Assembly (NCBI RefSeq): GCF_011386835.1
Contig: NC_088797.1
Span: 126,604,001-126,668,000, forward strand
Reading direction: 5' to 3'
From: Chrysemys picta bellii
Lineage: Eukaryota
Length of the DNA stretch: 64,000 bases
The notes beneath the pieces are model-generated. The model made no database searches and was not told the DNA's origin. It was given only the letters and a program-made list of their open reading frames with translations. Each line of letters opens with the position of its first letter. Position 1 is the stretch's first letter. Of the stretch, positions 24,901 through 64,000 are shown piece after piece. A program made the translations under genes and the position numbers.

Positions 24901-24978
24901 CCCGCCAGGCATTTGAAAAACAGGCTTCGCCTGCGAGGCTCAGGGGCCGATTCCAAGACCCCACCGCCCCCTGCCACT

Positions 24979-25137
24979 CAGGGCCGGCTCCAGGGTTTTG
25001 GCCGCCCCAAGCAGCCAAAAAAAAGGGAGTGAGAGACCGTCCGCCGAATTGCCACCAAATACCTGGACGTGCCGCCCCTCTCCGGAGCGGCCGCCCCAAG
25101 CACCTGCTTGAGAAGCTGGTGCCTGGAGCCGGCCCTG
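24979..25137. mobile_element. hAT MITE (159 bp)
   Basis: Perfect TIRs CAGGGCCGGCTCCAG / CTGGAGCCGGCCCTG; TSD CTGCCACT / CTGGCACT (7/8). Confidence 0.9.
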
Positions 25138-26709
25138 CTGGCACTGAAGGCAGCTTGTTCACGTGTTGCACGAGGAGCCCTTAGGCCGGGGGGGGAGTTC
25201 CGTTCTCTGCCTACGGTCAGTTTCTGTGGGTGTTTCTCAGGCAGGGGGCAAAGCGCCCAGCTCGGGGAGCTCCAGGCGAAAACCAACCAACTTGTTTTCA
25301 TTTAAATGAAACACACACAAGGGCAGGGAAACCTGCCGGTGTGGTACCCAGCTGCCCCTGGTCCTGCTCCACCCTCCGCAGCGAAGGGTGTCCCTGAAAC
25401 GGGGCAGGCATGGGGGCCTGTGCTGCCTTAGGCCAGTCTTGAGTGTGCCTGGATCCCCGTCGGAAAAGGGGCGAGAGCAGCCCTGGGCTCCCCTAGCCCC
25501 CTGGTGCCCCCTGCAGGTCCTGGGGGGGGGGGGGAAGTGGGTGAGGCAGCTCGGGGTGGGGGGATAGGGATTGGGGTTGGCATGGGCAACAGGCGTCCCC
25601 TCTCACTGCTCTCCGTCACGCCGCCCTCCCCGCTGGTTGGCAGAAGAGCCAGCAACAGAGGAACGGGGGGCAGGCTGGCATGGGCGTTACGGTGTTTTCC
25701 TGGTGGGTGAGGGGCCCAGCAGCGGGAAGGGCCCTGTGGAAACAGGGGCGGGGACGAAGCGGGTGGAAGGGGCATCACAGTTCTGCTCCCCCACAAGGCC
25801 GTATCCCCAGCGCTGGCCTCTCAGTGTGCAAAGGGGGATCACCAGCGCCCCAAAATGGGATAGGTCTGCCTGTCCTGCAGCCCCCTGCTCATCCAACCCT
25901 GGGCTGGCTCCCCCTCACCTCCTGCCAATGGCCCTCAATCACATCCTACAGGCCACCCCCATCCCCATCCCCACTATCCCAGCCTTGGCTTCCCCTCTCA
26001 GAGCTCTGCCGGTGCCCCTCACTCCCGACTCGCAGCCCCCTCCTAACCCAGCCGTGTGCGCCCCACCATCCCTGCTCACTTATACACCCAGCTCTGCCAG
26101 TGGGCTTCAGTCACAACCTCCAGGGGTGCCCTCCTCGCCCCCCCAGCAATGCTGGTGCCCCCTGCTATCCCAGCCCTGCATTGCCCATACCCCCAGCTCT
26201 GCCCCTCAAGCCCGACCCACAGCCCCCAGACTGTTCCGGTTTTAGCACAAGACCCTGCTGAGCCGAGCTGACACGACTACACAATCGTTTCACTGGCGAT
26301 TTAGCCCGAGCCTGCCCCTGACCCTGCGGGGGCAGACACACCACGCGCGTCACCCACTGTGCCGGGGCTGGGGGGGGTTTCCATTAGCAATGGTGCCTGG
26401 AGCTGAGGTTGGCAAAAGTGGGGCCCTCAGGCAAAGACCACGATTTCCAGCTCCACGTGGGTCTGAGGAGGAGCAAACGCACCCCCCCCCGGGCGCCATG
26501 GGGCCAGGCCAGATCCTCCCCCGGCCTTGTGGCTGCCACACGCCCGCTCTCCCTTATTACCAGCGACCTGTCGACTGCCTTTGCCGCGGAGTCCCCGGCC
26601 CCACATCGCTTTTAAATGGGTTTCAGGAACGGCTCCGGTCCCTGTTAAAAGGCCAGACGCGTCCAGGCAAGGGGGAGACCCTCCGTGGGGCCCGACAGAC
26701 CCGCCCGCG

Positions 26710-36570: not shown

Positions 36571-38574
36571 TCCTGGGGGGTAACTATGCCATCTTTGGAT
36601 GAATAGAATGTCTCGCACCTCCGAATGGTTCGTCAGCGCTCGGGGGGCTGGCGCATTAGAGAGATGGCAAAGGACTTTCCAGTATTCGGGTGCGCGGCTC
36701 CGCCTGAGTGCCCTCGGGCGCCGGGAAGCAGGTAAGTTGCACAGAACGCGCTCAGAGGCGTAACACGGGCATTATCAGAGTCCATAGTCGTTCCCATCGG
36801 CTCATTTCCTGACCTGGCTGCGTGTAACCACGTCTCCTGAACGGAGCTTTGGGAGGAGAGCTGCTCTGTACCACCCCAGAGCTGGGTGCATTTCAGCAAA
36901 GCAATTCCTGGCTAGGGCTTTGGGCTCCTGAAGAACTCATGGGCTGGACTTTAATTCCCACTTGGTCAGATCCCCCCAGACATGGGGCAGAGGGAAGCTT
37001 GGAAGTTAGGGGAGGGAAAGGCCAAATGAGGCTCACGCAGGCCGTATCCGGGCCACGCAGGCCTGGTCCCCATTGGAATTAGCCCGTAGTGTTCTGTCCA
37101 GACAGTGAGTTCTCCACCGGAAATCACAGAGGGACAAGCCTGGGGGGCAGGGCAGGGCTGGACTAGCCGGGGGGGGCAGGACGCGCGGCAGAGCTGGGGG
37201 GTTGGGTCTCACATCCACCAGTCATTGAGGTGGCCGCCCCTTGAACTCCCGGGCATGGTCAGAAGAGCCCGAGGGAGTCACGGTGCAAGGTGGCTGGGCT
37301 GACGGCCTCCTGCGGGTCTCGGGCGTGGGACCTGGAGGAACGGCCTGGAGTTAAGGGAGGGGAGCTGCAGCCTGAACACCAGGGGAGACCCCCGGATGGT
37401 GAGAGTGAGGGCAGGACCCGGGGAAGCAGCCTCCCTCTCGGGGCACTGGAAGCAAGACTGCCAGCACGCAGGCTGAGGTGCCGTCAGGCCCAGCACGGAC
37501 AGCAGCAGGTGCTTGGCCTGGCCAGACTGAACGGCCTCCCAGCGGTTCCCGTCCGCGTGCCCACCAGGCGCCCGCGGGTAGAGTTCCTGGGCTCATTCCC
37601 CTGCCCTGCCACTCCCGCCGCGGGCCCTTGGGCCAGTCACTTTAACCCCCCCCAACCGCCCAGCTGTAAACAGGGGTGGATGGTCCTGCTTTGCGCCCGT
37701 CGTCTCCCGTGTCTAGACAGCCTGTGAGCTCTTTGGGGCAGGAGCTGGCTGGGGCGCCCACCGGGTACCCGGCTCGCCCAGCTATGAATACTGCAGAACA
37801 ATAAATCAAATCACACACTAGGTGCCCGGGCGGGGGGGGGGGAGGGGCAGGACTCCTGGGTCCCATTCCAGACTTCTTTTGTGACCTGCACAAATCACTA
37901 ACTCACCCCGTGACTCAGTTTCCCCCTCCTAAGGGGGCTGATACTGACCCAGCTCCCCAACAGGGCATGTGACACTGACAGCACCGTGGAGGGAACGGAA
38001 GTGGGGGGACCCCTGGAACCCAGCACTGGAGCCCCAGGAACAACTGCCCAGAGACGCTTTTGTCTCCTAGCCCGAGGGCGCCTGATCCAGCGTCTCCGAG
38101 ACCTGCCAGGCCCCAGAGCCGGGCACGTGAGCAGGGAGGGCCGTGCCCCCTCCCCTCCCCAGCCAGTTCACGTTCCCTGGAGCACTAGTGACCTGCCATT
38201 AGTTACAACGCCTGAGCCCAAGTCCAAGGGCCACGAGCCAGCTCCAGCCTGGTGTGGGAGGGCAGCGGAGGGGGCTGGCAGGAGCCTGCGTGACACATGC
38301 AGCTGCTGGGAAGTCTCTGCTGCAGACCCTAGTGGGCGGCTCAGCGAATGCCCTGGGATCAGGGCCCTGGGACGCTCCGCAGGGCAGGGGCCTGTTCTCC
38401 CCCCGTCATCCCTCCCAGTGGTGACCCTGTTGGCTTCACATTGGCATGGGGAGGCTGCAGTCCCATGGGACGTGCTGCTCGCTGACCAGCCCCACCCTGA
38501 AGTGCGAGGGCAGGGAAAGGGGTCCCCTGCTTTGCTCTCTCTGGCTGCTCCATCTGCCCCCTTGACGCGTACTG

Positions 38575-39410
38575 CCGGTGCCCCTCAATCCCGACCCGCA
38601 GCCCCCTGCTAGCCCAACCCTGGGCTCCCCCCAGCTCTGCCGGTGCCCCTCACTCCCGACCCGCAGCCCCCTGCTAGCCCAGCCCTGGGCTCCCTCCAGC
38701 TCTGCCGGTGGCCCTCACTCCCGACCCGCAGCCCCCTGCTAGCCCAGCCCTGGGCTCCCTCCAGCTCTGCCGGTGGCCCTCACTCCCGACCCGCAGCCCC
38801 CTGCTAGCCCAGCCCTGGGCTCCCTCCAGCTCTGCCGGTGGCCCTCACTCCCGACCCGCAGCCCCCTGCTAGCCCAACCCTGGGCTCCCCCCTCTGCCGG
38901 CGCCCCTCACTCCCGACCCGCAGCCCCCTGCTAGCCCAACCCTGGGCTCCCCCCAGCTCTGCCGGTGCCCCTCACTCCCGACCCGCAGCCCCCTGCTAGC
39001 CCAACTCTGGGCTCCCTCCAGCTCTGCCAGTGCCCCTCACTCCCGACCCGCAGCCCCCTGCTAGCCCAGCCCTGGGCTCCCCCCTCCAGCTCTGCCGGTG
39101 CCCCTCACTCCCGACCCACAGCCCCTGCTAGCCCAGCCCTGTGCTCCCCCCTCCAGCTCTGCCGGTGCCCCTCACTCCCGACCCACAGCCCCCTGCTAGC
39201 CCAACCCTGGGCTCCCTCCAGCTCTGCCGGTGCCCCTCAATCCCGACCCGCAGCCCCCTGCTAGCCCAACCCTGGGCTCCCTCCAGCTCTGCCGGTGGCC
39301 CTCAATCCTGACCCACAGCCCCTGCTAGCCCAGCCCTGGGCTCCCCCCTCCAGCTCTGCCGGTGCCCCTCACTCCCGACCCGCAGCCCCTGCTAGCCCAA
39401 CCCTGGGCTC
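38575..39410. repeat. GC-rich minisatellite, ~65-bp unit x ~13
   Basis: Unit GCCGGTG(C/G)CCCTCACTCCCGACCCGCAGCCCCCTGCTAGCCCAGCCCTGGGCTCCCTCCAGCTCT; same family as 3252-4717 in the opposite orientation. Confidence 0.95.
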
Positions 39411-42400
39411 CCCACACAACTCTGTGTCCTTCATTACTTCATTATTCAATTGATGAGTCGCAGGTGGGTGTGCTCCGTCCCCTGCCGCCGAGCACCCGGG
39501 CAACCCCAGCGCTGCTAAGCTGAGCCTCTCCTCATCTCCGCTGGCACGACCGCAACGAACAGAAAACTCTCCGGCCAGTTCCAAACAGCCCCAGCGCTCG
39601 GCTTTCTGCCCTCCGGAGCCAGCCCGGGCCCCAGCTTGGCCGTAGGCTGCAGGAAGTGGGATGGGCAGCTTTTCAATGGGTCATTCATTTAACCAAGTTC
39701 CCCGCGGGCATTTCTACGGCTCGCCAGTTCCTGCCGCACGACCCCCCCAGAGCCGGGAGCAGCACTGGTCGGGGGGGGGGCGGCTCTGAGGATATCCACT
39801 CGCTCCCACCACGCTCAGTGACTCCTGGGGGCTCCAGCCTCGGAGGGTCTGCGACAGCCAGCCAAGGGGAAGGCACTTGCGCCCGCAGGGCAGGACCGGC
39901 GGGGCTGGGGCCAGAGAGCCAGACCCCCGTCCTGAGGATCTGACCCGCAAGGGGAGCCCAGCCCCTGAGGGAGGGGGGGTGGCTAAGGGAGGGGTGTGTA
40001 CAGCTGTTGGGTGGGTGCCGGCGTGTGCGTACACACGTCGGGGGCTGCGGGATGAGAGAAGGAACCACAGCATCCCACACGCACAGCCCTGCGCCCAGTC
40101 AAAGGCAGAGCCCCGGGGTGTCACGAGGGCCCGGACCCAGAGGCTGCTGCGGGCCCCAGCACCCCGTGCCCAGCGCGCTGTAGGCTCATGGGCTTCTCCA
40201 TTGTCTGGTCCTCCAGCTCCCTCTGCTGCCAGCAACCAGCCGCTGCTGCCCAAGTCCTACAGCAGGGCCCTGGACCCGGCTATACCAGCCGTCCCTGCCG
40301 TGGGGTCCCTCGTGGGTAATGAGGTGCTGTCTAGAACGCTGACCCCCTCGGGCACCACCCTGGCTGGGTGCGTCCAGTGACCCAATTGTCTCCTCAGCCT
40401 GTGGGTGGAGACCAGCCTAGGGTGTCACCCGATGAGCTGCCCAGGGCGGGGAGGTGCCGTGCAGCTGGCATGGGGACCCTCGTTCTCTGCTGCCCTGTAC
40501 CGTGGGCGCTCACTGATGCCAGGAGAAAGCGGGCAGGACATGACAGCTAGCCAGAACGGCTGCAACTCACAGTCCCTTCGCACGAGTGACTCCGCAAAGT
40601 GCAGGACGATGGCGAATCGGGCCCTGAGCTTTTGCACACTTGTTTCTCACCAAGTCCTCGGGCCAGGCTCTGTGTGTGTGTGTGTGTGTGTGTTAACCGG
40701 CCCATGCCAGACCATTACGCTACAGGGAGAGGGTGGGAGAAGGTCCAGCGCTCCATGCCCAGCGACTCCCCTGCACAACGCAGTCCCAGGTACCTCCCAG
40801 GTGAGCCCGACGTTCACAGCAGCTAACGAGCACGCCACGGGTGACAATGAATGACCCCAGAGCATGAGGCAGGGCAGGGGCTTTTAAAAACATATTTTAT
40901 TCATCAAACTCAATGAGGACAATTGAAGGAAAACTGAGCCGTCCCCTTCTTCGGCCCTACCTCAGAAGAGCAGATCAAAGGGGTATTTGAAAGTAAAAGG
41001 CAGGAAATTGAGCATCAGAGCCATGGAAATGTTCCGGTATCTGGCCCTGGCCCTGGCCCTGGCCCTGTGGAACTCAATGCCCGCAGAAAGCTGAGGGGCT
41101 GAATTCTGCGGCTGAAAAACGCACGTTTTGTTTTAGGGACAGAGGACTCACCGGAAAGCATCAGACCTGCCACCGCTCCTGTCAGGTCTCCTGGCTCCAA
41201 CGGCGGCTGGCACCGGATGCTTCAGACAAAGGTGCAAGAACCTCCAGAATGGACAGACCTGAAATAACCAGCCCGTCTAAGAATAACGGCCTGAACCCAG
41301 GCACGGTGCGCGTGGCCGAGTGGGGAGGGTTAATCACCACTCAGCTACGTTTTGATCCTCTTTCGTGTCATCTCTTCGTACCCAGCCAAGTGCCCGGTTC
41401 TGATCTGAATCCCACTTTGCCACCAGCTCTCAGCAAGGACAAGAGCCATGAGTTCCACAGGTTAATACCCATTATAGAGCTGAGAAAGCATTTCCTTTCC
41501 AATGCTGCCTTTCCATTTCATGGGCTGCTCCCCCTTGGATGCATATGCTGGGGCTGGGTGACGGGGAGTTGCTTCTTTCCCTCCTGTGAGTATTTTACAA
41601 GCCTCCTCTCTCACGCCCCTGGTAAATGCCTCGGGGCAGGGCCTGCGTATGGGGGCTGGAAGGCACCGTGCCCAGCGGTGGCGTTAAAACCACAAGCTAA
41701 TAAAGCAGTAAACAAGAAAGGTCAGTAATTCCGGGCAGCGGATGAAGAGGCAGCACTGCTCTGCCCACGCTGGGAGCACGTCGTACAGCTCCAAGCACCT
41801 CCGTGATGGAGCCAGAAAAGAGCAACCGAACACAAGGAAGGGGCAAGAGGGGACAGAGTGAAATCTACAGCCCCGAGCCTCGTAGAGGCAGCTGCCTGGC
41901 GCCCAGCCAGAGCTCCACCAAGGACCAGCCTTGAACCAGATCGCAGCCCAAGCTGGTTTTCTAGCATGGCTGGTGCCCCAGCGTGAGGGCAGTGCCGGGT
42001 GTGCACCCCAAGGTGCTCCGGGGGTCATGGGGGTGGGATTAACAGGCGATCTGCTCTTGGAAAACACCTGGTGAGGCCTGATAGGCTGTGGCCTCAGCTC
42101 CCAAGGGAAACACGGGAACCACCATCGCGACAAGTGGGTGGCTGAAGCCCCACGCTGCGTCCTTTCTACGGAGCGACCCCGGAGCTGGCAGGAATGGTGC
42201 TAGACGCACAGGCACCAAAGATGGGCCCTTTGCCATCAGGGAGCCCGGCACAACACTGGCCATGGGCCTGCTCCCCAAATCCCTAGAGCAGATCTTAGAA
42301 AACAGCCAATCCAGATTTAAAATGTGCCCATGCTGGCGATTCCACCATGCCCGTGGTAGATCATCGCGTGGTTAATTGCCCTCACACTCACTGTTCAAAA

Positions 42401-46005: not shown

Positions 46006-46110
46006 TCACTTGGGGCTGCCCCTGCTCGGCGTGTCGCCGGGCTCCGGGTTCTCCTCTTCCTCCAGGTACTGGCACATGCTGTCCACCAGGGAGTCCAGGC
46101 CCGCGAGCCC
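46006..46110 (-). CDS. Pseudokinase gene, final coding exon
   Basis: gggtctccgcag|GGG...AAG TGA; [34 protein letters not shown]. Confidence 0.8.
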   Translation of the reverse strand, partial: GLAGLDSLVDSMCQYLEEEENPEPGDTPSRGSPK

Positions 46111-49100
46111 CTGCGGAGACCCAGACGGGGGGTGAGTTACCAGCATGGGAGGGCCCCGCTCTGCCCTGCTGGGGGGGGTCACTGAGCTCAGCCCACCCCC
46201 AACGCCTGCTCCTGTCCCCTGCCCTGCCCGAGGCCCCCCCAGGCCCTTCGGGAGACCGTCCCCCAGCCTGAGCCATCGCACCGGTCCCCACCCCGCGGGC
46301 CCGGCTCACCTGGTGCTGGGCCAGCAGCGGGCGCACGCAGGTTCTCATGCTCTTCCGGAAGGCGTAGGGGTCCTCGCTGCTGGACAGGCTGCTGGGGTCA
46401 AAGCAGACGCCCTGGAGGCAAGAGAGGAGTGTGGGGAGGAGGTGAAACCCCACCGGCGAACCTGCCCCCCTCTCCCAGTCACCCCGGCCCCACCGCCAGG
46501 ACCCTGGGCAACAGATCATAGATCTGAGCCCCCCGCGCGATTCCCCACAGCCCAGCACCCCCTAGGGAGCCCCCCACCTGCCCCCCCCCCCGCATGCCCG
46601 GCGCCCCCTAGAGATCCCCCACCCGTGGCCCAGCGCCCCCTAGGGAGCCCCCTGCCTGCCTCCCACAGCACAGCGCCCCCTAGAGACCCCCCGCCCACGG
46701 CCCAGCGCCCCCTAGAGATCCCCCACCCGTGGCCCAGCGCCCCCTAGGGAGCCCCCTGCCCGTCCCCCGCAGCACAGCGCCCCCTAGAGACTCCCCGCCC
46801 ACGGCCCAGCGCCCCCTAGAGATCCCCCACCCGTGGCCCAGCGCCCCCTAGGGAGCCCCCCATCTGCCCCCCCTGCAGCCCGGCGCCCCCTAGAGATCCC
46901 CCACCCATGGCCCAGCGCCCCCTAGGGAGTCCCCCGCAGCTCAGTGCCTCCTAGAGACCCTCCACCCGCGACCCAGCGCCCCCTAGAGACCCCCCGCAAG
47001 CGACCCAGCGCCCCCTAGGGAGCCCCCGCCCGCCCCCACAGCCCAGCGCCCCCTAGGAAACCCCCCCACCTGCAGCCCAGCGCCCCCTAGAGAGCCTCCC
47101 TGCAGCACAGCAGCGCCCCCTGCTGCAGGGGCAGGAGCGGGGGGACGGGCTGTGGAAAGCCCCTTGTGCAGAGACCAGCGGGCGTGGGAGAGCAGCGAGC
47201 CCCACCTGGGCCGTGTAGATGGAGGCCGCGCCGACGTCCCCAGGGTGGAAGTGGTGGCGTTTGCAGAACCGCAGGAAGTTCAGCACCTCCCGCAGGGCTC
47301 GAGCTCCCTCCAGGCCGGGCCCCTCGGGCGGCCGCCCCACCGCTGGGGAGGGCAGAGGAGACAGATCAGCGACCGGGACCCTGCAGGCCCAGGCTGCCCG
47401 GTCACTCCAGCCAGGGCGACCGTCCCAGAGAACGGGGACCAGGGAGCTGCCAGCGCCCACGGCTTAGACTCGGGGACCGCCGCGTCCCAGCAGGGCCAAC
47501 CAGCCCCAGCTCCCAGCCCCAGGGCCCTCTAGGGAACCTGCCGGAGGAAAGGGGCTGCCCAGAGAACCGCCACTCGGCTGGGATCCTGCCCCACACTCCT
47601 GGGAGCCGGTGGCCCCACTAGCCCATATCCCGCCTTTGAGAGCCACTAGGCACCCAGCCCCTCGCTTGCCTCTCCAGCGTCTCAGCCGTTCCCAGAACCA
47701 GAGCCTGGCCCTGCCGGGGGGCAGACGGGCCAGGGCCTCCCCACGGCTATTCCAGCCCGACCTGGGTGGGGTGCTGGGGATCTCGGCGCTCGCCCGCCCC
47801 CCCCATTAACGGGGTGCTGGTGGGACACTGGCGGGAACCTCTCTACTGCAGCCTGGTGCCCCGCGGGTGCCCACGTGCTGCCCCGGCTGCCCCCCCATGC
47901 CCTGCCGGGCGCTCACCGTGCACGTCCCTGTCCTCCATGAGGTAGAGGATGGAGCCGTTGCGGTCGTACAGGACGGCGTAGGGTACCAGCAGCGTGGGGT
48001 GAGGGGGCAGGAACAGGAAATTGTGTAACATCTTCCTCCAGTCGGAGACCACGGGCACCTGGCAAACAGAGGAGAGGCTGAGACTGCGTCCTGGGCCCCA
48101 ACCAGCATCAACTGGGGCCCCTCAGTCCCGACCCGCAGCCCCCTGCCAGCCCAGCCCTGGGCACCCCCACCCCAGCTCTGCCAGGGCCCCTCACTCCCAA
48201 CCCGCAGCCCCCTGCTAGCCCAGCCCTGGGCTCCCTCCAGCTCTGCCGGTGCCCCTCACTCCCGACCCGCAGCCCCCTGCCAGCCCAGCCCTGGGCTCCC
48301 CCACCCCCAGCTCTGCCAGGGCCCCTCACTCCCCACCTGCAGCCCCCTGCCAGCCCAGCCCTGGGCTCCCCCACCCCAGCTCTGCCGGTGCCCCTCACTC
48401 CCGACCCGCAGCCCTGGGCTCCCCCCACCACAACCCCTGAATCCCGACCTCCAGGATACGCAGAGGTCTGCTGTTTGCAGGCTCCTCGGGGCAGGGAGCC
48501 CGTCTCAGTCTGCACTCCCTACAGCCCTGAGAACAGGGGTGCAAATGCCCATTCCTGGTCCCTCCCTCCCCAAATGCGCCTCGGCTCTGGGCCGAGGACA
48601 CCCCACTCCAACCCCCTCGTCCGGGCCAGGCCCTGGGGTCAGCTGCCGGGCCACGCTCTTCCCCGGAGCTAAATCGGGCGCCGGTTTCCAGAGGCCGCCG
48701 TCGACGGCCATCAATAGCGCTCGGTTAATTAATTTGATGGGAACAGCAGGGACCACACTTTGCATTTAGTGAAGTTCCGAGAACTTCCAACCTCATCTTC
48801 ATAATTGGCCTCATAAATTTGAGGAAAGAGAGAAATCAGCAAAGCAGGAGGAGGGAAAGGAGCGAGAGGAACCGCTGCGCGCGGCAGAGAAGAGAAGTGG
48901 CTCCATTTGGCGTCCTTATTTAATTTGATTGCACAGATCCATCTTCCCCCTCCCTCCGCCAGCCCCCGCGCTCCCTGCTGGATTGACCTAATCATGATAA
49001 ATTCATATTCATTTCCCCGCCTGCGCCGGCGGGGGGAGCGCGCTCGTTACGCCTGCCCGCCCGGCCGCCACGCCATTAGCTCCTGCAAATATTTACTCAT

Positions 49101-52100
49101 GAATATTAAGCTCTGCATTAACATGCAAAACCCACTGAGGCCCCCCACCCCCCGCCACCCCAGCTCCCGGTGTCCTTCCAGGTCTCCCGCGCTGCAGCGG
49201 GCGCCAGGCAGGTGTGATTAAACATTGAGATGCTTGGAGGAGCCGGTGATTAAAGCTCGCCGCTCCCCGGGGATGGGGAGCAGAGAGGGCGCAGGGGCTC
49301 CGTGTGGATCAGATCCTGGGAGGTGCTGAGGAGAGGCTCAGAGATTCTGCATCGCCCTCACCCCCCGCCAGCCCAATGGCCTAATGGTTAGTGCTGGGCT
49401 GGGTGGGCCCCACTGCTATTCCTGCCCCAGCTCCCTCTCACAGCCCAGGGGCAGCGGGTCGGGAGTGAGGGGCACCGGCAGAGCTGGAGGGAGCCCAGGG
49501 CTGGGCTAGCAGAGGGCTGCGAGTCGGGAGTGAGGGGCCCCGGCAGAGCTGGGGGGGGCAGGGCTGCGCTATCAGGGGGCTGCGGGTAGGGAGTAAGGGG
49601 CACCAGCAGAGCTGGAGGGAGCCCAGGGCTGGGCTAGCAGGGGGCTGCGGGTCGGGAGTGAGGGGCACTGGCAGAGCTGGAGGGAGCCCAGGGCTGGGCT
49701 AGCAGGGGGCTGCGGGTCGGGAGTGAGGGGCACTGGCAGAGCTGGAGGGAGCCCAGGGCTGGGCTATCAGGGGGCTGCGGGTCGGGAGTGAGGGGCACCG
49801 GCAGAGCTGTGGGTGGGGGAGAGCCCAGGGCTGCGCTATCAGGGGGCTGCGGGTTGGGAGTGAGGGGCACCGGCAGAGTGGGGGTGGAGTGGGAAGCCCA
49901 GGGCTGGGCTATCAGGGGGCTGCGGGTCGGGAGTGAGGGGCACCGGCAGAGCTGTGGGTGGGGGAGAGCCCAGGGCTGGGCTAGCAGGGGGCTGCGGGTC
50001 GGGAGTGAGGGGCACCGGCAGAGCTGTGGGTGAGGGAGAGCCCAGGGCTGGGCTAGCAGGGGGCTGCGGGTCGGGAGTGAGGGGCACCGGCAGAGCTGTG
50101 GGGGGCAGCACCGTAGCAGCAGGGGGCCATTCCCAGCTCCAGGACCTCCCACTCCATTTTCAGCTGCTGCAACATTTGGTTTATTTTTAATTTTCAGGAT
50201 CATCAGATTCACAGCCAGTGGGGAGGGGGGGGGGCAGCCCCTTCCCGGGAAGCAGAAGCCAGGAAGCTGTGGAATGACAGCGCATTAGAGCCGTGTAATG
50301 TCCTCATCGCTCACCATGGGCCGCTCTCGGTCCCCCTCCCACCACGCGGCCCCTCAGACACCGACGCGGGACTGTCCCCTGCTGGCTGGAGTGGGCCCAG
50401 CCCAGGCCCCCTCTCCAGGGCTCTCTGGGGCTCCGGACAGGGCAGGTCCTTGGCCACGTACCTTTTTCATCAGCATGCTCTCCCCGGTGACCCGGTCCCG
50501 CGCTCGGAACCAGCGATCCGCCAGCTTCTCCGTGACGTAGAACTGCCGGCCCAGAGCGTAGTACAGGAAGAGGCTGCAGTTGGGCAGGGTCGTGGCCAGC
50601 TTCCGCCCATCCCGCTGGAAAGGAGAAGGCATTTTAATGAACATACCAACGGCCAGACTGGGTCAGACCAAAGGTCCATCCAGCCCAGTGTCCTGTCCAC
50701 CGACAGTGGCCAATGCCAGGTGCCCCAGAGGGAATGAACAGAACAGGGAATCATCCAGTGATCCATCCCCTGTCGCCCATTCCCAGCTTCTGGCAAACAG
50801 AGGTTAGGGACACCATCCCTGCCCATCCTGGCTAATAGCCATTGATGGACCTGTCCTCCATGAACTTAACTCGTTCTTTTTTGAACCCTGTTATAGTCTT
50901 GGCCTCACAACATCCTCTGGCAACAGGTTGACTGTGTTGTGTGAAGTAGGACTTCCTTTTGTTTGTTTTAAACCTGCTGCCTATTAATTTCATCGGGTGA
51001 CCCCCTAGTTCTTGTGTTATGAGAAGGAGTAAATAACACTTCCTGATTTACTGTCTCCACACCAGTCATGATTTTATAGATCTCTATCCTATCCCCCCTT
51101 AGTCGTCTCTTTTCCAAGCTGAAAAGTCCCAGACTTATTAATCTCTCCTCATACGGAAGCCGTTCCATTCCCCTAATCATTTTTGTTGCCCTTTTCTGAA
51201 CCTTTTCCAATTCCAATATATCTTTTTTGAGATGGGGCGGCCACATCCGCACGCAGTATTCAAGATGTGGGCTTACCATGGATTTATATAGAGGCAATCT
51301 GATATTTTCTGTCTTATGATCTACCCCTTTTTTAATGATTCCCAACATTCTGTTCGCTTTTTTGACTGTCGCTGCACATTGAGTGGCAGAGAACTATCCA
51401 CAGTGACTCCAAGATATCTCTCTTGAGTGGTAACAGCTAATTTAGACCCCATCATTTTATATGTATAGTTGGGATTATGTTTCCCAATGCGCATTACTTT
51501 GCATTTATCAACATTAAATTTCATCTGCCATTTTGTTGCCCAGTCACCCAGTTTGGTGAGACCCTTTTGTAGCTCTTTGCAGTCTGCCTGGGACTTAAAT
51601 ATCTGGAGTAGTTTTGTATCATCTGCAAATTTTGCCACCTCACTGTTTACCCCTTTTTCCAGATCATTTATGAATATGTTGAATAGGACTGGGCCCTGTA
51701 CAGACCCCTGGGGGACACCACTATTTACCTCTCTCCATTCTGAAAACTGACCATTTATTCCTCCCCTTTGTTTCCTATCTTTTAACCAGTTACCAATCCA
51801 CGAGAGGACCTTCCCTCTCATCCCAGGACAGTTTACTTTGCGTAAGAGCCTTGTTAAAAGCTTTCTGAAAGGCCAAGCACACTGTACAGACTGGGTCCCA
51901 TTCACCCTTTGGGCCGCAGCGTTGCACTGGGAGCCCACGTTTAGCTGATTGTCCACCACGACCCCCAAATCTTTGTCAGAGTCGCTGCGTCCCAGGATAG
52001 CGACCCCCCCGTAGGGCTGTCTGCATTCTCCGTTCCTCCATGCAACATTCATAGATTCAAGGACTGGAAGGGACCTCGAGAGGTCATGGAGTCCAGTCCC

Positions 52101-55100
52101 CTGCCTTCATGGCAGGACCAAATACTGTCTAGACCATCCCTGATAGACATTTATCTAACCTACTCTTAAATATCTCCAGAGATGGAGATTCCACAACCTC
52201 CCTAGGCAGTTTATTCCAGTGTTTAACCACCCTGACAGTTAGGAACTTTTTCCTAATGTCCAACCTAGACCTCCCTTGCTGCAGTTTAAACCCATTGTTT
52301 CTGGTTCTATCCTTAGAGGCTAAGGTGAACAAGTTTTCTCCCCCCTCCTTATGACATTTAGCCACATTTGAATGCGTATCCCCAGCTCGCCCTGCACCGA
52401 GGATCTGACCTCTCTGTTACTTCCCACTCCCCCAGTGGGTGTGTCACCTGCAAACGTTACCAGGGAGGATTTTCGGTTTCCTTCCCGGTCACTGATCAGA
52501 ATGGTAAGTTGTGTAGGCCCAAGAACCAACCCTGGCGAGATTCCTCCAGAAACCCCCCCGCTCCATGACGATTCCCCAGTTACATTTTGAGACCCATCAG
52601 CCAGTTTTTAATCCATGTCCCGTGGCCGTGTTAGTTTGATATCGTGCTAGTTTTTTAGGCAAAATATCATGTGGTACCAAGTCAAGCGCCTGACATGGCC
52701 TTTGGGGGTGAAAGGAAACACAAGGGTCTACAAGCCGGCTGGGAACCACCAGGGAGGGCCTTGCGTCAAACCGCCTAGTGGTACGTGAACCTCATGGAGA
52801 AATCAAGCTTCAGGGCATAAACCTGCAGGGTCAGGAAGGAATTTTGACAGCAGCTGTACAATTAACCAGGTGCATTATGGGGATTTGGCCTGACTGTGGG
52901 TCATAGGTGGGATGCTTGCAGACCAGGCACCAGCTCGCCTGGGCACTGGCAAATACACAGCCGGAGTCCGGCTCACCTGCTAACACAGGTATTCGCTTGC
53001 TCAGCAGCCGTGTTGTGTCTGTGACTGCGAATCGCCGTACAGGAGAGGGGCATTAACCCGAGCGAAGAGCTGCGCAGAGCGCAGGAGCTCCGGGGCTGGA
53101 GAGTGTCTCGGAGGCTGGGTTACCGCCCTGCCTGTCCACACCCAGAGTACTAGGTGCAAACGCTGGCTCAAGTCACAAGGGGGAACGAAGCGGGTAAGAA
53201 CATAGGAGCTGCCAGGCTGGGTCAGACCAAGGGTCCATCTAGCCCAGTGTCCTGTCCTCAGTATCTTGCCAGCGGCCAGCGCCGGCTGCTGCAGAGGGAA
53301 GGAAGAGAACAGGGCAGGTATGGAGTGGAGGGAGCCGGCTCGCCGCTGTTTGGGTCCAACAGGGAAACCAGCAAGAGGCTTGGCGCCAGCAGCAGGCTGC
53401 ATTTAAAAAAGTGCGGGACTAAGTGGCCGGGGGCTGTGGGTTGGGATGGGGGCACCGGTGGGGAGGGGGAGGCTGTGGGTCAGGATCAAAGATCGCAGAG
53501 CTGAGGCAGGGGAGGGGGGGAGGGGAGTATAGGGCTGGAAAAGCTGTGTGGCGGGGTATGGGGGTCAAACCAATGAGCTCATTGGATCAAGGACTGTCCT
53601 TTCCTAGCTGCGTACCACACCTGGCACATTTGGGGCACTCCTGTAATCCTGGGGTTCTCCACCTTTTCCATACCAGGACCCCCCCCCCCATCTAGTCACG
53701 ACCCATAGCAGAGAACCCCTGCTGGGGGTCACAGCTACTAGCAGGCTCAGGGACGCAGGGCAGCAGCCGGCCGTGGGCACACGGGAGAGGGGTTAAGCCC
53801 GAGCCAGGTTCCTCGCCCGTTCAGCTCCCTGCCGGGCACCCGCCGGGCGAGCTGTCGGCACTCACCATGGGCAGGATGGCCAGCCCCAGCGCCGCATGCT
53901 CCTCCACTCGTCCCAAGACCAGGCCCGAATCCAGGAGCGAGAAGCAGCCGCCCTCGGCGTCCAGGAACGTCCGTCTCAGCTCCTCCAGGAGGGACAGGCC
54001 GCACGCCTTGGTGAGCCTCCCGTAGGCGTCCTCCACGGACGTCTTAGTGGGAGCGCTGGCACCCGCGGGCCCCAGGTCCCTGATTTGCTGGGCCTGGCTG
54101 GCCGGCTCCTGGGAGACGGGCTGGCTGCTTTCACGGCCTGGGCCGGCTGAGCCAACAGAGCTCCTGGTCCCCGGCCGCTTCCCCAGCTCAGTGCCCCGGG
54201 GCCGACTTGTAACTGCCTCCTCCTCTGTCCTGCCGGGACCTTCCGGCGGCAGCTCCTCTTCCCGTGGGTCTGCTGAGGGGGGCTCTGGCTGAGGGGGGGC
54301 ACACGGGGCCAGCCCGCTCCCCACTGGATGGGGGATGTCCCGTGTCCCTTCCCGGCCGATCACCAGCTCCCTCGTGCCCTCGCTCAGCGCGATGCTGCCG
54401 TCCCGCCGCGGCTTGGCTGCTGTTTCTGATGTCAAGGGGTCACGCCCACGGCCTGCGCCCTCAGCCCGGCGTGTGCCCGCCCTGCCCGCCGAGAGGCCAA
54501 GAGCTGCGCTGGGAGGGACGCCCGCACAGTCCTGCTCTTCCCGGACCCCACAGCGACTCTCTGGTGGAGAGACATCCCGTCCCGGCTGCATGGGGCAGAG
54601 CCGCGCCTCAGCCCAGGGGGAGCAGCCTTCTCGGATGGGGGGCTTCTCCAAGGCCGAGGGGGGAGCCGTCCCATCCTCCAGCCCTGGCTTGGTCTCTGGG
54701 GGCTCCCAGAGCTCTAGATCCAGGCCTTTGAGGCCCCCGCACCTCCCTGGCTCTCCCCAAGGCCCGCTGCTCAGCCTGGCCGGCCCGGTGGGCAGCTCGC
54801 TGGGCTGCAGTGTGAGGCGGGGGTCTCGGTGCGGGGGCGCAGAGCTGGTCCCGAAGCTGAACGGCAGTGTGGACTGGCCAAAGCCCTTCCCCGGGCAGGA
54901 CCCCGGGGGCAGCTTGGGGTAGGGGGCGTTCCAGAGTCGGCAGCCGGCGCCAGGCTGGGGTCCCGTCTGCAGCTTAGCGAGGCTGCAGCAGCGGCAGCCG
55001 GCGGGAGAGGGGGGCCCCTCGTAGCCCGGCACGGGCAGCGCCCCCGTCTCGCTGACGGCCGTCTTGATGGCGTGCTGATGGCTCCGCGTCCCCCCCGAAG

Positions 55101-55164
55101 GCAGCAGCGCGGCGGTGAGGTCGATGTCGGTCTCCGTGGTGATGGGGGACCCGGTGCGCTGCAT
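46006..55164 (-). CDS. Uncharacterised 645-aa protein with a truncated pseudokinase domain; join(55164-53866, 50614-50462, 48058-47917, 47342-47206, 46411-46310, 46110-46006)
   Basis: Six exons with canonical GT-AG sites and consistent phases (0,0,1,0,0), total 1938 nt with no internal stop. Kozak GTCACCATGC; high GC3. Kinase-like [60 protein letters not shown]. Confidence 0.85.
46310..46411 (-). CDS. Pseudokinase gene, coding exon 5
   Basis: ctcttgcctccag|GGC...CAG|gtgagc; 102 nt; [34 protein letters not shown]. Confidence 0.85.
46554..47125 (-). repeat. Tandem array (32-42-bp spacing) carrying ~15 CTCF-like motifs
   Basis: GCGCCCCCTAG occurs exactly 14 times (46601, 46633, 46673, 46705, 46737, 46777, 46809, 46841, 46883, 46915, 46976, 47008, 47046, 47080), plus GCGCCCCCTGCTGC at 47113 and two degenerate copies. 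Confidence 0.85.
47206..47342 (-). CDS. Pseudokinase gene, coding exon 4
   Basis: ctgccctccccag|CG...CAG|gtgggg; 137 nt; (A)[45 protein letters not shown]. Confidence 0.85.
47917..48058 (-). CDS. Pseudokinase gene, coding exon 3
   Basis: ctctgtttgccag|GTG...CAC G|gtgagc; 142 nt; [47 protein letters not shown]. Confidence 0.88.
48115..48420. repeat. Minisatellite of the 65-75-bp family, ~5 copies (C-rich on +)
   Basis: CCCCTCACTCCCGACCCGCAGCCCCCTGC(T/C)AGCCCAGCCCTGGGCTCC units. Confidence 0.9.
48690..49260. promoter_or_regulatory. Candidate conserved intronic enhancer
   Basis: Dense homeodomain-type motifs (TTAATTAATT, CATAATTGG, CATAAAT, TTATTTAATTTGATTG, CTAATCATGATAAAT, two GTGATTAAA, CTGCAAATATTTAC) in unique sequence between two repeat arrays. 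Confidence 0.6.
49440..50100. repeat. Minisatellite of the 65-75-bp family, ~10 copies (G-rich on +)
   Basis: GGGCTGCGGGTCGGGAGTGAGGGGCAC(C/T)GGCAGAGCTG...GAGCCCAGGGCTGGGCTAGCAGG units; inverted relative to 48115-48420. Confidence 0.92.
50462..50614 (-). CDS. Pseudokinase gene, coding exon 2
   Basis: ccttctcctttccag|CGG...AAG|gtacgt; 153 nt; [51 protein letters not shown]. Confidence 0.88.
50641..51865 (-). mobile_element. Relatively young 5'-truncated CR1 LINE (RT C-terminal half to 3' end)
   Basis: ORFs 51321-52052 and 50968-51348 encode CR1 RT ([21 protein letters not shown]...KFADDTKL) and the C-terminus (HLEYCVRMW...[12 protein letters not shown]); frameshifted by a deletion. Confidence 0.95.
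51870..52700 (-). mobile_element. Old CR1 RT fragment interrupted by a younger CR1 3' end (52050-52352)
   Basis: The outer piece encodes [13 protein letters not shown] and SLVTFAGDT-like degenerate RT motifs; the inner piece encodes [31 protein letters not shown] and the CR1 3' UTR. Confidence 0.75.
53190..53315 (-). mobile_element. CR1 3' end fragment
   Basis: taagaacataggagctgccaggctgggtcagaccaagggtccatctagcccagtgtcctgtc is a reverse-complement CR1 terminus. Confidence 0.75.
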
Positions 55165-55205
55165 GGTGACCCCGCACAGATGGTGGCTCCCCGGCAGGAA
55201 CAGCC
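53866..55205 (-). CDS. Pseudokinase gene, coding exon 1 (ATG at 55164)
   Basis: Acceptor tgtgtctcctcccag (exon starts 55205); donor ATG|GTGAGT. 433 codons [21 protein letters not shown]...[25 protein letters not shown]...LAILPM; long Pro/Gly/Ser-rich middle. Confidence 0.8.
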
Positions 55206-56139
55206 CTGGGAGGAGACACAAGGGACAGGGGTGACAGGCGCTGGCCTCGGGGCTAGCTAGGCGCTGGGCCTGCGGGTGCAGCCCGCTCCCCGGCTCGGGT
55301 GCAGCCCCAGGGCCCGTCACTGACCCGTCCCCTCAGCAGATCTCCCCAGCCTGGGGCCGAGGGGAAGCTCAGGGTCTGTTCCCACCCTGGGCAGGTCCCC
55401 AGCCCTTCTGGGGACGCGGTGCATTCTCACTGCTCCCTGGGTACCCCCCACCTACCCCAGCCAGCCCTGCAGCGACCCCTCTAGGGCGAGGGGGGTTTGG
55501 TCTCCCAGTCCCTTTCAGTCCTCGGCCCCCTCTTGGGGTCGCCAGCAAGGGGCCTGGCTAGTGCCCAGCGTGGGGGCTGTTTGTACGTGGACACCCACTC
55601 CCCGGGAACCGGGCAGTGCGCGACCCGCTTGGCACAGGTCACCAGTGGTGGTCCGGCCACCTGCTGCTCCCTCCCGGCTGCCCTGGCGGCTGAAGGGGTC
55701 TGATCTGCGGGGAGCTGGCGGGCGACCAGGCCCCAAGGACGGGCTGCAAATGAGGGAATTCCACAAGCCTTGTCCGCACACGGACTCGGCAGAGCGGCCA
55801 CAAGGGGGTGCCATTCTCACACCGATGCTCACGGGCCGGGGGAGTCAACGGGACAGCACCGTAGCCACGGCTGGGAGCCCGAGGGGCCAGGCAGGGCCTG
55901 GGGACCCCCCGCTGCCTGCCTCAGCTCCGTCCTAATGCTTTGAGAGCAAGAACGGGTGAGCTGCTGCGCCGCAGGGCCCTGCTGCCACTCCGGCTGCGAG
56001 CTTCCTCCCCACCGTGCCCTGTCAGTAGTAGGGTCAGTCCCCTTCCGGGAACTGAGTCTCCGTTACCTGTGACCTGTCCCCGTCCCCACCCCTCCATCGC
56101 TCGCTCTGTTCTCAGAGTTTTCCCCACTCAGGAACTTAC

Positions 56140-62853: not shown

Positions 62854-63218
62854 TCACCAGTCCCGCTCGGTGGGCTCCCGGTAGGGCAGCCCTAGCAGCA
62901 CGAAGACGTCCCTCTCGGTGGGGGTGGGCAGGACGAGGCCGGGCCCCACCTTGCGGCCGCCGGGGGCGCGCACCACGGCGGTGTGGAGCGCGTGCTCTGA
63001 CAGGCTCATGCCCTTGGTCTTGGCCAGCGCTCGCATGGAGCGGTTGAAGTGGGCTGAGCCGGTGAAGTACAGGAGGGCGCAGGCGAACTCGCCGTGGGGC
63101 ACCACGATGATGTCGAGGCGCCGGTGGCGCCGGCCTGGCCCGGGCAACCGGCACACGCCCAGGTACTTCTTCTGGTTGCCGCTGTCTTCTTGGCTCACCA
63201 GGTCGTCGGTGAGGAAAC
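62854..63218 (-). CDS. POLL: DNA polymerase lambda, final coding exon
   Basis: Acceptor ctcctctggcag; (G)[75 protein letters not shown]...[13 protein letters not shown]; X-family polymerase C-terminus closely matching Pol lambda. Confidence 0.98.
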
Positions 63219-63791
63219 CTGCCAGAGGAGCAGCGTGAGAGGAGGGGACGGGCTGTGACCCCACCCTCTTCCCTGGCTCCCGCGGAAGCATCCCATAATC
63301 CACTGTACGGGTCCCTGGGCTCCTCCTAAAGGGGGCTCCTGGGCACTGGCTCTGGGTGCAGCGGGAGCACTCGCCAAGCCGCACCCGCTGCGCCGGCAGC
63401 ACCAACGCTTGGCCACCTTCGAACAAGGGTCCTGTTGGGAGCCGCCCCCGCTGCAGCACCGACCCAGCCAGCTTCCCGAGCTCTGTCGCAGGCCCCCCAA
63501 GTGAGAACGCCCCTGGGACCGGCTCGGGTCCATCGAGCCCAGCATCCTGGCTCAGACAGGGTCCAGGACCAGATGCTGCCGAGGAAGACCCCTGTGGCAG
63601 GTACTATGGGGCACCCACCCACAGAGAAAGTCCTCCTGACCCCCAAGGCAACAGACCATCCTGGATTCAGCCCTTTAGTGTCTGATCCACAGGCAGGGCA
63701 AGGCCCCGCGCCGGCTGCTCGCACTGACACAAACCCCTTCGCCTCCCATCGCGGAAAGTGCCAGCCAGCCGCCCGGCTGCAAGCCACGTAC

Positions 63792-63960
63792 CGCTCCGCC
63801 GCAGGCTGTCAAGCAGCTTGTCGAAGACGCCGCGGTGAGACTGCCCGTCAGGGTGGGTAACCAGGACGTCCACATCGCCGCAGGTGGCCTTCCCCCGTCG
63901 GTACGAGCCGCACGCCATGCACACCAGCCCAGGGTTCAGGGACCGGGCTGCTTCTCGCAC
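63792..63960 (-). CDS. POLL: DNA polymerase lambda, penultimate exon
   Basis: cttccccaag|GTG...AGC G|gtacgt; VREAARSLNPGLVCMACGSYRRGKATCGDVDVLVTHPDGQSHRGVFDKLLDSLRRS (GSYRRG and catalytic GDVDVL motifs); phase 1 matches the final exon. Confidence 0.98.
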
Positions 63961-64000
63961 CTTGGGGAAGAGTCGGGATCAGGAACCGGAGACCAGCACT

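What the first reader, a model, noticed from the sequence alone, without database searches (positions are those of the whole stretch)
46006..55164. Intact unnamed gene encoding a C-terminally truncated pseudokinase downstream of POLL
Seen in sequence: six exons splice with canonical sites into an uninterrupted 645-aa ORF. The last ~210 aa align by eye to kinase subdomains I-VII: [27 protein letters not shown] (cf. Y...EKLG.G.YG.VYKARD..TGE.VALKK), HPTLL..ILYLMED (cf. HPNIV..LYLVMEY), [26 protein letters not shown] (cf. QIL.GL.YLH...HRDLKP.NIL) and CFDPS (cf. LADFG). The beta3 Lys, the catalytic Asp and a DFG-position Asp appear retained. The Gly-rich loop, alphaC Glu, catalytic-loop Lys/Asn, APE motif and helices F-I are missing. 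Established: I know of no such gene between BTRC and POLL in human. Inference: a non-mammalian, probably catalytically dead scaffold kinase, possibly undescribed.
Basis: partly seen in the sequence, partly recalled or inferred. Interest (0 to 1): 0.88.

Follow-up and report, generated by a model that had tools for sequence, protein, structure and literature searches.

The report
Hidden minimal pseudokinase gene beside POLL
A real, spliced and expressed turtle gene just downstream of DNA polymerase lambda encodes a protein whose conserved tail folds like a stripped-down, probably inactive protein kinase. The family is unnamed and has no Pfam match; it was found from sharks to marsupials but not in placental mammals, birds or teleosts.

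Summary
Six minus-strand exons (55164..46006) with canonical GT..AG sites join into a 645-aa ORF that is 98% identical to NCBI's "uncharacterized protein LOC128840655" of Malaclemys. Spliced contigs from four sequencing runs (kind on record as a guess, "RNA?") carry the exon 1-exon 2 junction. They also show an acceptor at 55205, so at least one 5' exon was missed.

No Pfam family matches, and profile searches give only insignificant hits (Snf1 kinase E 0.14; I-CreI by chance). An AlphaFold2 model of the last 281 aa (pLDDT 83, pTM 0.81) matches only protein kinases (VIA-align Z about 12 over 180-205 residues; Foldseek E about 1e-6). Language-model features also point to divergent kinases and the PAN3 pseudokinase.

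The beta3 Lys and the DFG-position Asp are invariant in 32 orthologues. The Gly-rich loop, alphaC Glu, catalytic Asn, activation segment and most of the C-lobe are absent, and the HRD-position Asp survives in only 14 of 32.

The family is single-copy and unnamed. It occurs in sharks, non-teleost ray-finned fishes, coelacanth, lungfish, amphibians, turtles, monotremes and marsupials, so it is not "non-mammalian". POLL lies directly upstream in turtles, platypus and possum. A 40-aa N-terminal motif is equally ancient. Most likely it is a scaffold pseudokinase; its function is untested.

The parts
55165..55205 (-). 5' part of the first coding exon (open frame, no ATG in this species), starting at a canonical acceptor (polypyrimidine tract + CAG) at 55205. 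At least one further 5' exon lies upstream and was not located.
   Evidence: Contigs of 4 runs all stop matching at 55205 and continue 119-1261 nt elsewhere. Sequence context. The Eretmochelys model P0006 splices an upstream exon onto this point.
53866..55164 (-). Coding exon 1 (aa 1-433): N-terminal motif, Pro/Gly-rich linker, long helix and beta extension of the C-terminal module
   Evidence: covered by spliced contigs
55033..55152 (-). Conserved N-terminal motif (aa 5-44; core SPITTE-DID-TA-LLPSGG--SH-H---AVSET), present from shark to turtle
   Evidence: D15, A18, L20, P22, S23, G24 invariant in 17 species
53923..53937 (-). LLDSG motif (aa 410-414) in the beta extension in front of the kinase-like N-lobe; D and G invariant in 32 sequences
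50462..50614 (-). Exon 2 (aa 434-484): strands beta1-beta3 of the kinase-like N-lobe. Invariant Lys483 (codon 50467-50465) is the inferred beta3 lysine.
   Evidence: junction 53866|50614 in 4 runs
47917..48058 (-). Exon 3 (aa 485-532, phase 1): alphaC-like helix (invariant W491, K493, F498, L499; no Glu), beta4, beta5 and a hinge-like LYLMED
47206..47342 (-). Exon 4 (aa 532-577): alphaE-like helix with invariant C558, and a degenerate catalytic loop HPGD (D567, codon 47238-47236; family-wide D14 N9 E5 K3 Q1) with a hydrophobic or Ser residue at the Asn position
46310..46411 (-). Exon 5 (aa 578-611): beta8 and the invariant F-D-P-S/T motif at the DFG position (D582, codon 46399-46397), then the first C-terminal helix with invariant K597
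46006..46110 (-). Exon 6 (aa 612-645 + TGA): second C-terminal helix and acidic tail
62854..63971 (-). Context: the last two coding exons of POLL (palm and thumb), same strand; the stop lies about 7.6 kb upstream of the acceptor at 55205
   Evidence: Pfam DNA_pol_B_thumb E 5e-23 and DNA_pol_B_palm E 2e-16; conserved with the platypus and Carettochelys POLL ends

Best explanation
This is the emydid-turtle orthologue of an unnamed, single-copy gene of jawed vertebrates. The protein has three parts. (1) A 40-residue N-terminal motif that is nearly unchanged from sharks to turtles. (2) A fast-evolving Pro/Gly/Ser-rich linker, about 320 aa here and up to about 1700 aa in frogs. (3) A conserved C-terminal module of about 280 aa: a long helix, a small beta extension, and a minimal protein-kinase-like fold. 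That fold has the N-lobe strands beta1-5 and alphaC, then an alphaE-like helix, a degenerate catalytic loop, beta7/8, an FDPS motif in place of DFG, and two closing helices. There is no activation segment and no substrate-binding C-lobe. Shown here: the gene, its splicing and its presence in spliced contigs of public runs; purifying selection on the C-terminal module; the predicted kinase-like fold; the pattern of kept and lost motifs; the phyletic range; and the linkage to POLL. Inferred: the module does not transfer phosphate and works as a docking or conformational unit, as in Tribbles, PEAK or PAN3 pseudokinases, while the N-terminal motif and linker recruit partners. The invariant Lys483 and Asp582 may stabilise the cleft or bind a ligand.
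For: Gene reality: exon map and splice sites; 98.45% identity to an NCBI model; spliced contigs in 4 runs; exact orthologous CDS in 3 other turtles, with dN/dS 0.16-0.42 for the C-terminal module against 0.37-0.90 for the N-terminal part. Fold: AlphaFold2 with a 32-sequence alignment gives pLDDT 82.9 and pTM 0.81. VIA-align against 48,161 chains gives 231 chains at Z>=8, and all top 50 are protein kinases, Z 10.4-12.6, 166-205 residues aligned, rmsd 3.2-4.9 A. AFDB and ESM Atlas hits are kinases and Tribbles, TM 0.55-0.63 by query in the Atlas. Sequence-only language-model features score 0.96 to divergent fungal kinase clusters and 0.95 to PAN3. [quoted passage not shown] Architecture: the N-terminal motif is conserved with the domain across 17 species while the linker varies.
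Against: No sequence method reaches significance against any kinase: Pfam finds nothing at E<=10, and the best profile hit is Snf1 at E 0.14. The kinase assignment therefore rests on a predicted structure and on language-model features. Residue equivalences (K483 = beta3 Lys, D582 = DFG Asp) come from the motif pattern and predicted secondary structure, not from a residue-level superposition; HMMER's Snf1 alignment places the KK pair four residues later. The strict conservation of K483 and D582, and an ancestral-looking H-P-G-D in shark, coelacanth, lungfish and turtles, would also fit a residual nucleotide-dependent activity. No partner, tissue or phenotype is known. The one interaction test gave no verdict.
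Confidence: 0.62

Rival explanations
1. It is an atypical but active enzyme, in the manner of RIO or Bud32/PRPK: a minimal kinase or ATPase (or another nucleotide-using transferase) that uses the invariant Lys483 and Asp582, at least in lineages that keep H-x-x-D.
For: K483 and D582 are invariant over about 450 My. Shark, coelacanth, lungfish and turtles share HPGD at the catalytic-loop position.
Against: The HRD-position Asp is replaced by N, E, K or Q in 18 of 32 orthologues although the domain stays under constraint. There is no Gly-rich loop, no alphaC acidic residue and no catalytic Asn. A bulky Leu sits at the beta3 Ala position.
Confidence: 0.2
2. These are not the exons of an independent gene. 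They would be alternative 3' exons or a read-through product of POLL, which lies 7.6 kb upstream on the same strand.
For: Contigs continue 119-1261 nt upstream of the acceptor at 55205 into sequence I could not place. POLL lies upstream on the same strand in the turtle, monotreme and marsupial loci fetched.
Against: NCBI models it as a separate gene in every species seen. The Eretmochelys model has its own start codon in a short upstream exon unrelated to the POLL domains. In gar and Xenopus no POLL gene lies within 10 kb. The ORF has its own conserved N-terminal motif straight after the ATG.
Confidence: 0.07
3. The kinase-like model is misleading, and the domain is something else: a new fold, or a relic of a LAGLIDADG homing endonuclease, as the I-CreI hits might suggest.
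For: phmmer and profile searches of PDB sequences list I-CreI. E is 0.0036-0.0095 for an engineered tandem chain and 0.18-1 for the natural enzyme. There are two ordered islands of identity: F-V-T-Q/E-K----W-F and K-x-L-H-N-F-L. No kinase reaches significance by sequence.
Against: With an 18-sequence profile the I-CreI hit vanished. The natural enzyme never scores below E 0.18. The low E of the tandem chain sums two weak copies. No LAGLIDADG motif is present. No homing endonuclease is among the 50 chains listed from the search of 48,161 chains, whereas 231 chains reach Z>=8 and all 50 listed are kinases. Language-model features, which do not depend on the fold prediction, also say kinase.
Confidence: 0.04

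Closest known systems
Tribbles pseudokinases (TRIB1-3) and STK40
   Same: Degenerate kinase fold used as a scaffold. No Gly-rich loop, an altered DFG region, and the beta3 Lys kept (motif table in PMC7586955). TRIB2/3 are among the best AFDB and Atlas structural matches.
   Different: Tribbles keep a full C-lobe with the F-helix Asp and match Pfam Pkinase. This family has no Pfam match and no activation segment, and its short acidic tail shows no C-terminal COP1- or MEK-binding motif. No Tribbles protein was found by the family profile.
NIK (MAP3K14) and COT/TPL2 (MAP3K8) kinase domains with N-terminal extensions
   Same: These are the top structural matches once the helix and beta extension in front of the N-lobe are included: COT Z 12.6 over 205 residues, NIK Z 12.1 over 203, and NIK and COT lead the Foldseek list.
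   Different: They score within 1 Z unit of generic kinases, with 12-17% identity and no sequence-level hit. NIK and COT are active kinases with complete C-lobes. A specific relationship is not shown.
RIO and Bud32/PRPK minimal atypical kinases
   Same: Small kinase-like domains. Rio2 (Z 12.5) and Rio1 (Z 12.1) are among the matches. From general knowledge, these kinases have no activation segment and a reduced C-lobe.
   Different: From general knowledge, RIO and Bud32 keep the catalytic Asp and Asn and bind ATP. Here the Asn is absent and the Asp is not conserved.
PAN3 pseudokinase
   Same: Language-model features place the domain next to Pan3_CK clusters, score 0.95. It is a pseudokinase embedded in a larger adaptor protein.
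   Different: There is no Pan3_CK Pfam hit. From general knowledge, PAN3 binds ATP and has a coiled coil and a C-terminal knob.
PEAK1 / PRAG1 / PEAK3 scaffolds
   Same: A long disordered N-terminal region with short conserved motifs, followed by a C-terminal pseudokinase flanked by helices on both sides. The comparison with the PEAK architecture is from general knowledge.
   Different: No PEAK protein was found by the family profile in 1.8 billion representatives. The PEAK pseudokinase has a full C-lobe. Dimerisation was not tested here.

Membership tests
Protein kinase-like (PKL) fold | Five-stranded N-lobe sheet with an alphaC helix, joined by a hinge to an alphaE helix, catalytic loop and beta7/8 | tested here: met
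   Predicted only. AF2 pLDDT 82.9, pTM 0.81. All top-50 VIA matches are kinases, Z 10.4-12.6 with 166-205 residues aligned. Foldseek lists only kinases at E about 1e-6 to 1e-5.
Eukaryotic protein kinase domain (Pfam PF00069 / PF07714) | Significant match to the Pkinase or PK_Tyr_Ser-Thr profile | tested here: not met
   No Pfam family at E<=10 for six full-length orthologues or for single exons. The best kinase by profile against PDB sequences is Snf1, E 0.14.
Catalytically competent protein kinase | Gly-rich loop GxGxxG | tested here: not met
   The beta1-beta2 segment F-Y-V-T-E-x-L-x-x-x-W-F has no conserved Gly. Canonical motif taken from PMC7586955.
Catalytically competent protein kinase | beta3 Lys (VAIK) | tested here: met
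   K483 is 32/32 in M-L-M-K. The register is inferred from the motif pattern and the predicted strand, not from a superposition. The Ala position holds Leu in 31/32.
Catalytically competent protein kinase | alphaC Glu pairing with the beta3 Lys | tested here: not met
   The alphaC-like helix reads W-x-K-x-L-H/Q-N-F-L, with no acidic residue.
Catalytically competent protein kinase | Catalytic loop HRDxxxxN (Asp and Asn) | tested here: not met
   Asp position: D14 N9 E5 K3 Q1 of 32; it is D in this turtle. Asn position: I, L, S, M, V or T.
Catalytically competent protein kinase | DFG Asp | tested here: met
   F-D-P is invariant (32/32) directly after predicted beta8, 15 residues after the HRD-position residue. 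The register is inferred.
Catalytically competent protein kinase | Activation segment ending in APE, and helices alphaF-alphaI | tested here: not met
   Only about 63 residues follow the FDPS motif. They form two helices and an acidic tail, and there is no APE motif.
Pseudokinase (kinase fold lacking canonical catalytic motifs; canonical motifs as tabulated in PMC7586955) | Kinase-like fold plus loss of at least one of the VAIK Lys, HRD Asp or DFG Asp, or of other essential motifs | tested here: met
   Family-wide, the HRD Asp is lost in 18/32, and the Gly-rich loop, alphaC Glu and catalytic Asn are lost in all. The turtle protein itself keeps all three signature residues but lacks the other motifs. 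Lack of activity was not measured.
LAGLIDADG homing endonuclease | LAGLIDADG helix motif and alpha-beta-beta-alpha-beta-beta-alpha fold | tested here: not met
   Natural I-CreI scores only E 0.18-1 and is absent with the 18-sequence profile. No such chain is among the structural matches listed.
PEAK / Pragmin family | Sequence relationship to the PEAK pseudokinase and dimerisation through the flanking helices | tested here: inconclusive
   No PEAK protein is among the 34 hits of the family profile in 1.84 billion representatives. Flanking helices are present in the model. Dimerisation was not tested.

The most novel reading that the evidence does not exclude
This is a previously unrecognised family of the kinase-like superfamily. 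It is a single-copy 'minimal pseudokinase' that arose by the time of the jawed-vertebrate ancestor. It is not detected as a kinase by Pfam or by profile searches against solved structures. It carries an equally ancient N-terminal docking motif, has stayed directly downstream of POLL in turtles, monotremes and marsupials, and has been lost independently in eutherians, archosaurs, squamates and teleosts. It would then be a signalling or adaptor component that the standard model organisms, apart from Xenopus, lack, which would explain why it was never studied.
Probability: 0.55. Interest if true: 0.7.

Novelty: new variant of a known kind. Interest (0 to 1): 0.6.

Why it matters
Kinome and pseudokinome catalogues are built from sequence profiles and centred on human and mouse. 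A conserved vertebrate protein that matches no Pfam kinase profile and was found in no placental mammal falls outside both. If the fold prediction holds, this is an unusually reduced kinase-like domain under purifying selection for about 450 million years. It would show how little of the kinase scaffold is needed for a conserved, presumably non-catalytic role. The repeated losses give a natural experiment on what it is needed for. Xenopus tropicalis and the opossum both carry it, so genetic tests are possible. The gene models in public databases also need attention: several are named 'collagen alpha-1 chain-like' or 'serine-rich adhesin-like' because of the low-complexity linker, and the 5' exon is missing from most turtle models.

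Tried and rejected
- Pfam on each exon and on six full-length orthologues found nothing at E<=10.
- ESM Atlas features for exon 1 alone gave no usable hit.
- The I-CreI homing-endonuclease similarity was followed and rejected. It disappears with one profile, is never significant for the natural enzyme, and has no structural support.
- Complex prediction of the N-terminal motif (aa 1-60) against the C-terminal module (aa 365-645) returned 'no answer' (score 0.00). The alignments were not used and the domain itself folded poorly there, pLDDT about 55. This is evidence neither for nor against an intramolecular contact.
- Four literature searches found no paper on this family. They covered the LOC identifiers of six orthologues and combinations of pseudokinase, marsupial, monotreme, loss and fold terms.
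- A pattern search for WD40 repeats in all six frames found nothing, so BTRC's WD40 exons are not in this window.
- Pfam on 17 long ORFs elsewhere in the window gave only low-complexity hits.
- I tried to find the missing 5' exon with the Eretmochelys N-terminus and by conservation with Carettochelys. There was no convincing match, only small conserved blocks at 55568-55643 and 55780-55835.
- The scan's own notes hold nothing for this place.
Full report
**1. What is in the sequence**

On the minus strand, six exons join into one 1938-nt reading frame of 645 codons plus TGA:
- E1 55164-53866
- E2 50614-50462
- E3 48058-47917 (ends in phase 1)
- E4 47342-47206
- E5 46411-46310
- E6 46110-46006

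. Each intron begins with GT (GTGAG, GTACG or GTGGG) and ends with a polypyrimidine tract and CAG.

**2. It is a real, expressed gene**

- The translation is 98.45% identical over its full length to NCBI's "uncharacterized protein LOC128840655" of Malaclemys terrapin. Seven other turtle species have orthologous models.
- Projecting the window's exons onto the Malaclemys, Gopherus and Carettochelys loci gives coding sequences that translate exactly to the database proteins.
- Logan contigs were laid on 50400-55400 from four runs, four studies and three species labels. The record gives their kind only as a guess ("RNA?").
- In every run a contig carries the joint 53866|50614 (3251 nt skipped, GT..AG on the minus strand). 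Depth is zero over unique intron sequence. The deep parts of the intron are interspersed repeats.
- These contigs extend 130-634 nt past exon 2, which fits the 486 nt of exons 3-6 plus some 3' UTR. This agreement is arithmetic, not a direct observation.
- The contigs also stop matching at 55205 in all four runs and continue for 119-1261 nt. Position 55205 follows a canonical acceptor, and the sea-turtle model P0006 splices a short upstream coding exon onto exactly this point.

**3. Selection**

Nei-Gojobori estimates among four turtles give:

| Region | dN/dS |
|---|---|
| C-terminal 246 codons | 0.16-0.42 |
| First 399 codons | 0.37-0.90 |

. The C-terminal part is under purifying selection. 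The N-terminal part, outside its first 44 residues, evolves almost freely and is 17% Pro and 14% Gly.

**4. Family and range**

A profile of the C-terminal domain was searched against 1.84 billion representative proteins. It finds 34 proteins and nothing else at E<=0.001. All carry names such as "uncharacterized" or a name driven by low complexity, for example "collagen alpha-1 chain-like" or "serine-rich adhesin-like". They come from:
- sharks (Pristiophorus, Scyliorhinus, Rhincodon)
- Polypterus, sturgeon and paddlefish, gar and bowfin
- coelacanth and lungfish
- frogs, salamanders and a caecilian
- turtles
- platypus and echidna
- seven marsupials

No eutherian, bird, crocodilian, squamate or teleost protein appeared, either there or in the 90%-cluster search. 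This reflects absence from annotated proteomes; genome-level absence was not tested.

POLL lies directly upstream on the same strand in Malaclemys, Gopherus, Carettochelys, platypus and Trichosurus. In the window itself, POLL's palm and thumb exons are at 63971-63789 and 63222-62854. Gar and Xenopus have no called gene within 10 kb.

**5. What the C-terminal domain is**

Sequence methods fail. Pfam gives nothing at E<=10. The best kinase hit of the family profile against all PDB sequences is yeast Snf1 at E 0.14-1.1.

Structure prediction is clear:
- With 18 sequences, the last 246 residues give pLDDT 71.
- With 32 sequences and 35 more N-terminal residues, the model reaches pLDDT 82.9 and pTM 0.81.
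- Its elements, in model numbering, are: a long helix (13-38); a small beta extension (45-78); three strands (94-122); a short helix (127-135); two strands (146-162); a 17-residue helix (180-196); a short loop; two short strands (208-217); and two helices (228-265).
- VIA-align against 48,161 chains finds 231 with Z>=8. The top 50 are all protein kinases or pseudokinases, Z 10.4-12.6, 166-205 residues aligned (first model).
- AFDB Swiss-Prot, AFDB clusters and the ESM Atlas agree. TRIB2/3 are among the best matches, and the family forms its own AFDB cluster.
- With the longer model, COT and NIK lead the lists, but they score within 1 Z of other kinases, so I draw no specific relationship.
- Independently of any fold prediction, language-model features of residues 365-645 score 0.96 to divergent fungal kinase clusters and 0.95 to PAN3 pseudokinase clusters.

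**6. Catalytic motifs**

I used the canonical list in PMC7586955 and the 32-sequence alignment.

| Canonical motif | State in this family |
|---|---|
| Gly-rich loop | Absent |
| beta3 XAXK | M-L-M-K; Lys483 invariant; Leu (31/32) at the small Ala position |
| alphaC Glu | Absent; helix reads W-x-K-x-L-H-N-F-L |
| HRD Asp | H-P-G-D in turtles, shark, coelacanth and lungfish; overall D14 N9 E5 K3 Q1 |
| Catalytic Asn | Hydrophobic residue or Ser |
| DFG | F-D-P-S/T; F, D and P invariant |
| Activation segment, APE | None |

Two helices follow FDPS and close the domain. The residue equivalences are inferred from the motif pattern, the spacing (15 residues between the two Asp positions, against 18 in PKA from memory) and the predicted secondary structure. 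They do not come from a superposition. HMMER's Snf1 alignment shifts the KK pair by four residues.

By the usual definition the family is a pseudokinase. The turtle protein keeps all three signature residues but lacks the other motifs.

**7. Other conserved parts**

- The first 44 residues hold a motif with D15, A18, L20, P22, S23 and G24 invariant in 17 species from shark to turtle.
- A second short motif, LPFSFG, recurs in turtles, platypus, a caecilian and lungfish.
- LLDSG (aa 410-414) is invariant and sits in the confidently modelled beta extension.
- The linker between the N-terminal motif and the C-terminal module ranges from about 300 to about 1700 residues.

**8. Mechanism**

The pattern is an invariant end motif, a free linker, and a constrained but catalytically stripped kinase-like module. 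This is the pattern of scaffold pseudokinases such as Tribbles and PEAK, and I consider it the most likely reading (about 0.6).

An atypical enzyme in the manner of RIO or Bud32 remains possible (about 0.2), because Lys483 and Asp582 never change. A test of whether the N-terminal motif docks on the module gave no verdict. Whether transcripts start at their own promoter or include POLL read-through is open, but the separate gene models and the gene's own start codon argue for an independent gene.

**9. The I-CreI hits**

phmmer and one profile list the homing endonuclease I-CreI, with two ordered islands of identity. The E-value is significant-looking only for an engineered tandem chain. The hit vanishes with another profile and has no structural support. 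I treat it as chance.

**10. Novelty and verdict**

The gene is predicted by annotation pipelines but is unnamed, has no Pfam family, and appears in none of the papers I could search. Its kinase-like nature and its phyletic pattern appear to be unreported.

"Non-mammalian" is wrong, "catalytic Asp retained" holds for turtles only, and the transcript has an extra 5' exon.

Species: the window is about 97% identical in DNA to Malaclemys. Another note of this scan calls this genome painted turtle; I did not verify that.

Noticed in passing
window 49448-50102, 48115-48414 and 38572-39424: The same GC-rich 65-72-bp tandem satellite occurs twice in intron 2 of the gene and again about 7 kb downstream of it, partly in opposite orientation. 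Copy number differs from Malaclemys, which accounts for the different gene lengths.
   Followed up: partly
window 46544-47121: Intron 4 is largely a C-rich tandem array (periods 32, 72 and 104 bp, 70-83% matches). It creates long spurious proline-rich ORFs on both strands.
   Followed up: partly
window 50968-52365 (minus strand): Intron 1 holds a fragment of a non-LTR retrotransposon: an ORF with a reverse-transcriptase domain (RVT_1, E 5e-18). It is covered at very high depth by repeat-derived contigs in all runs.
   Followed up: partly
window 62854-63222 and 63789-63971 (minus strand): These are the last two coding exons of POLL (thumb and palm), conserved with platypus at 75-83% DNA identity. 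The POLL stop is at about 62854.
   Followed up: yes
However, the spacing is off by one, the Ser is not conserved, and the segment is a confidently modelled beta strand. It is probably structural.
   Followed up: no
window 55568-55643 and 55780-55835: Two short blocks 82-83% identical to Carettochelys lie just upstream of the acceptor at 55205, in otherwise poorly conserved intergenic DNA. They are candidates for a promoter or 5' exon of the gene.
   Followed up: no
window 23302-25184 (both strands): A GC-rich stretch (about 68-70% GC) with overlapping ORFs of more than 540 aa on both strands gives only low-complexity Pfam hits (FH1-like, below cut-off). It looks like compositional ORFs, not genes.
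   Followed up: partly
orthologues P0028, P0030-P0035 (frogs): In neobatrachian frogs the linker has expanded so that the protein reaches 1800-2076 aa, while the N-terminal motif and the C-terminal module stay in place. Several public names ('serine-rich adhesin for platelets-like', 'collagen alpha-1 chain-like', 'streptococcal hemagglutinin-like', 'AKAP5 protein, partial') are artefacts of this low-complexity region.
   Followed up: partly
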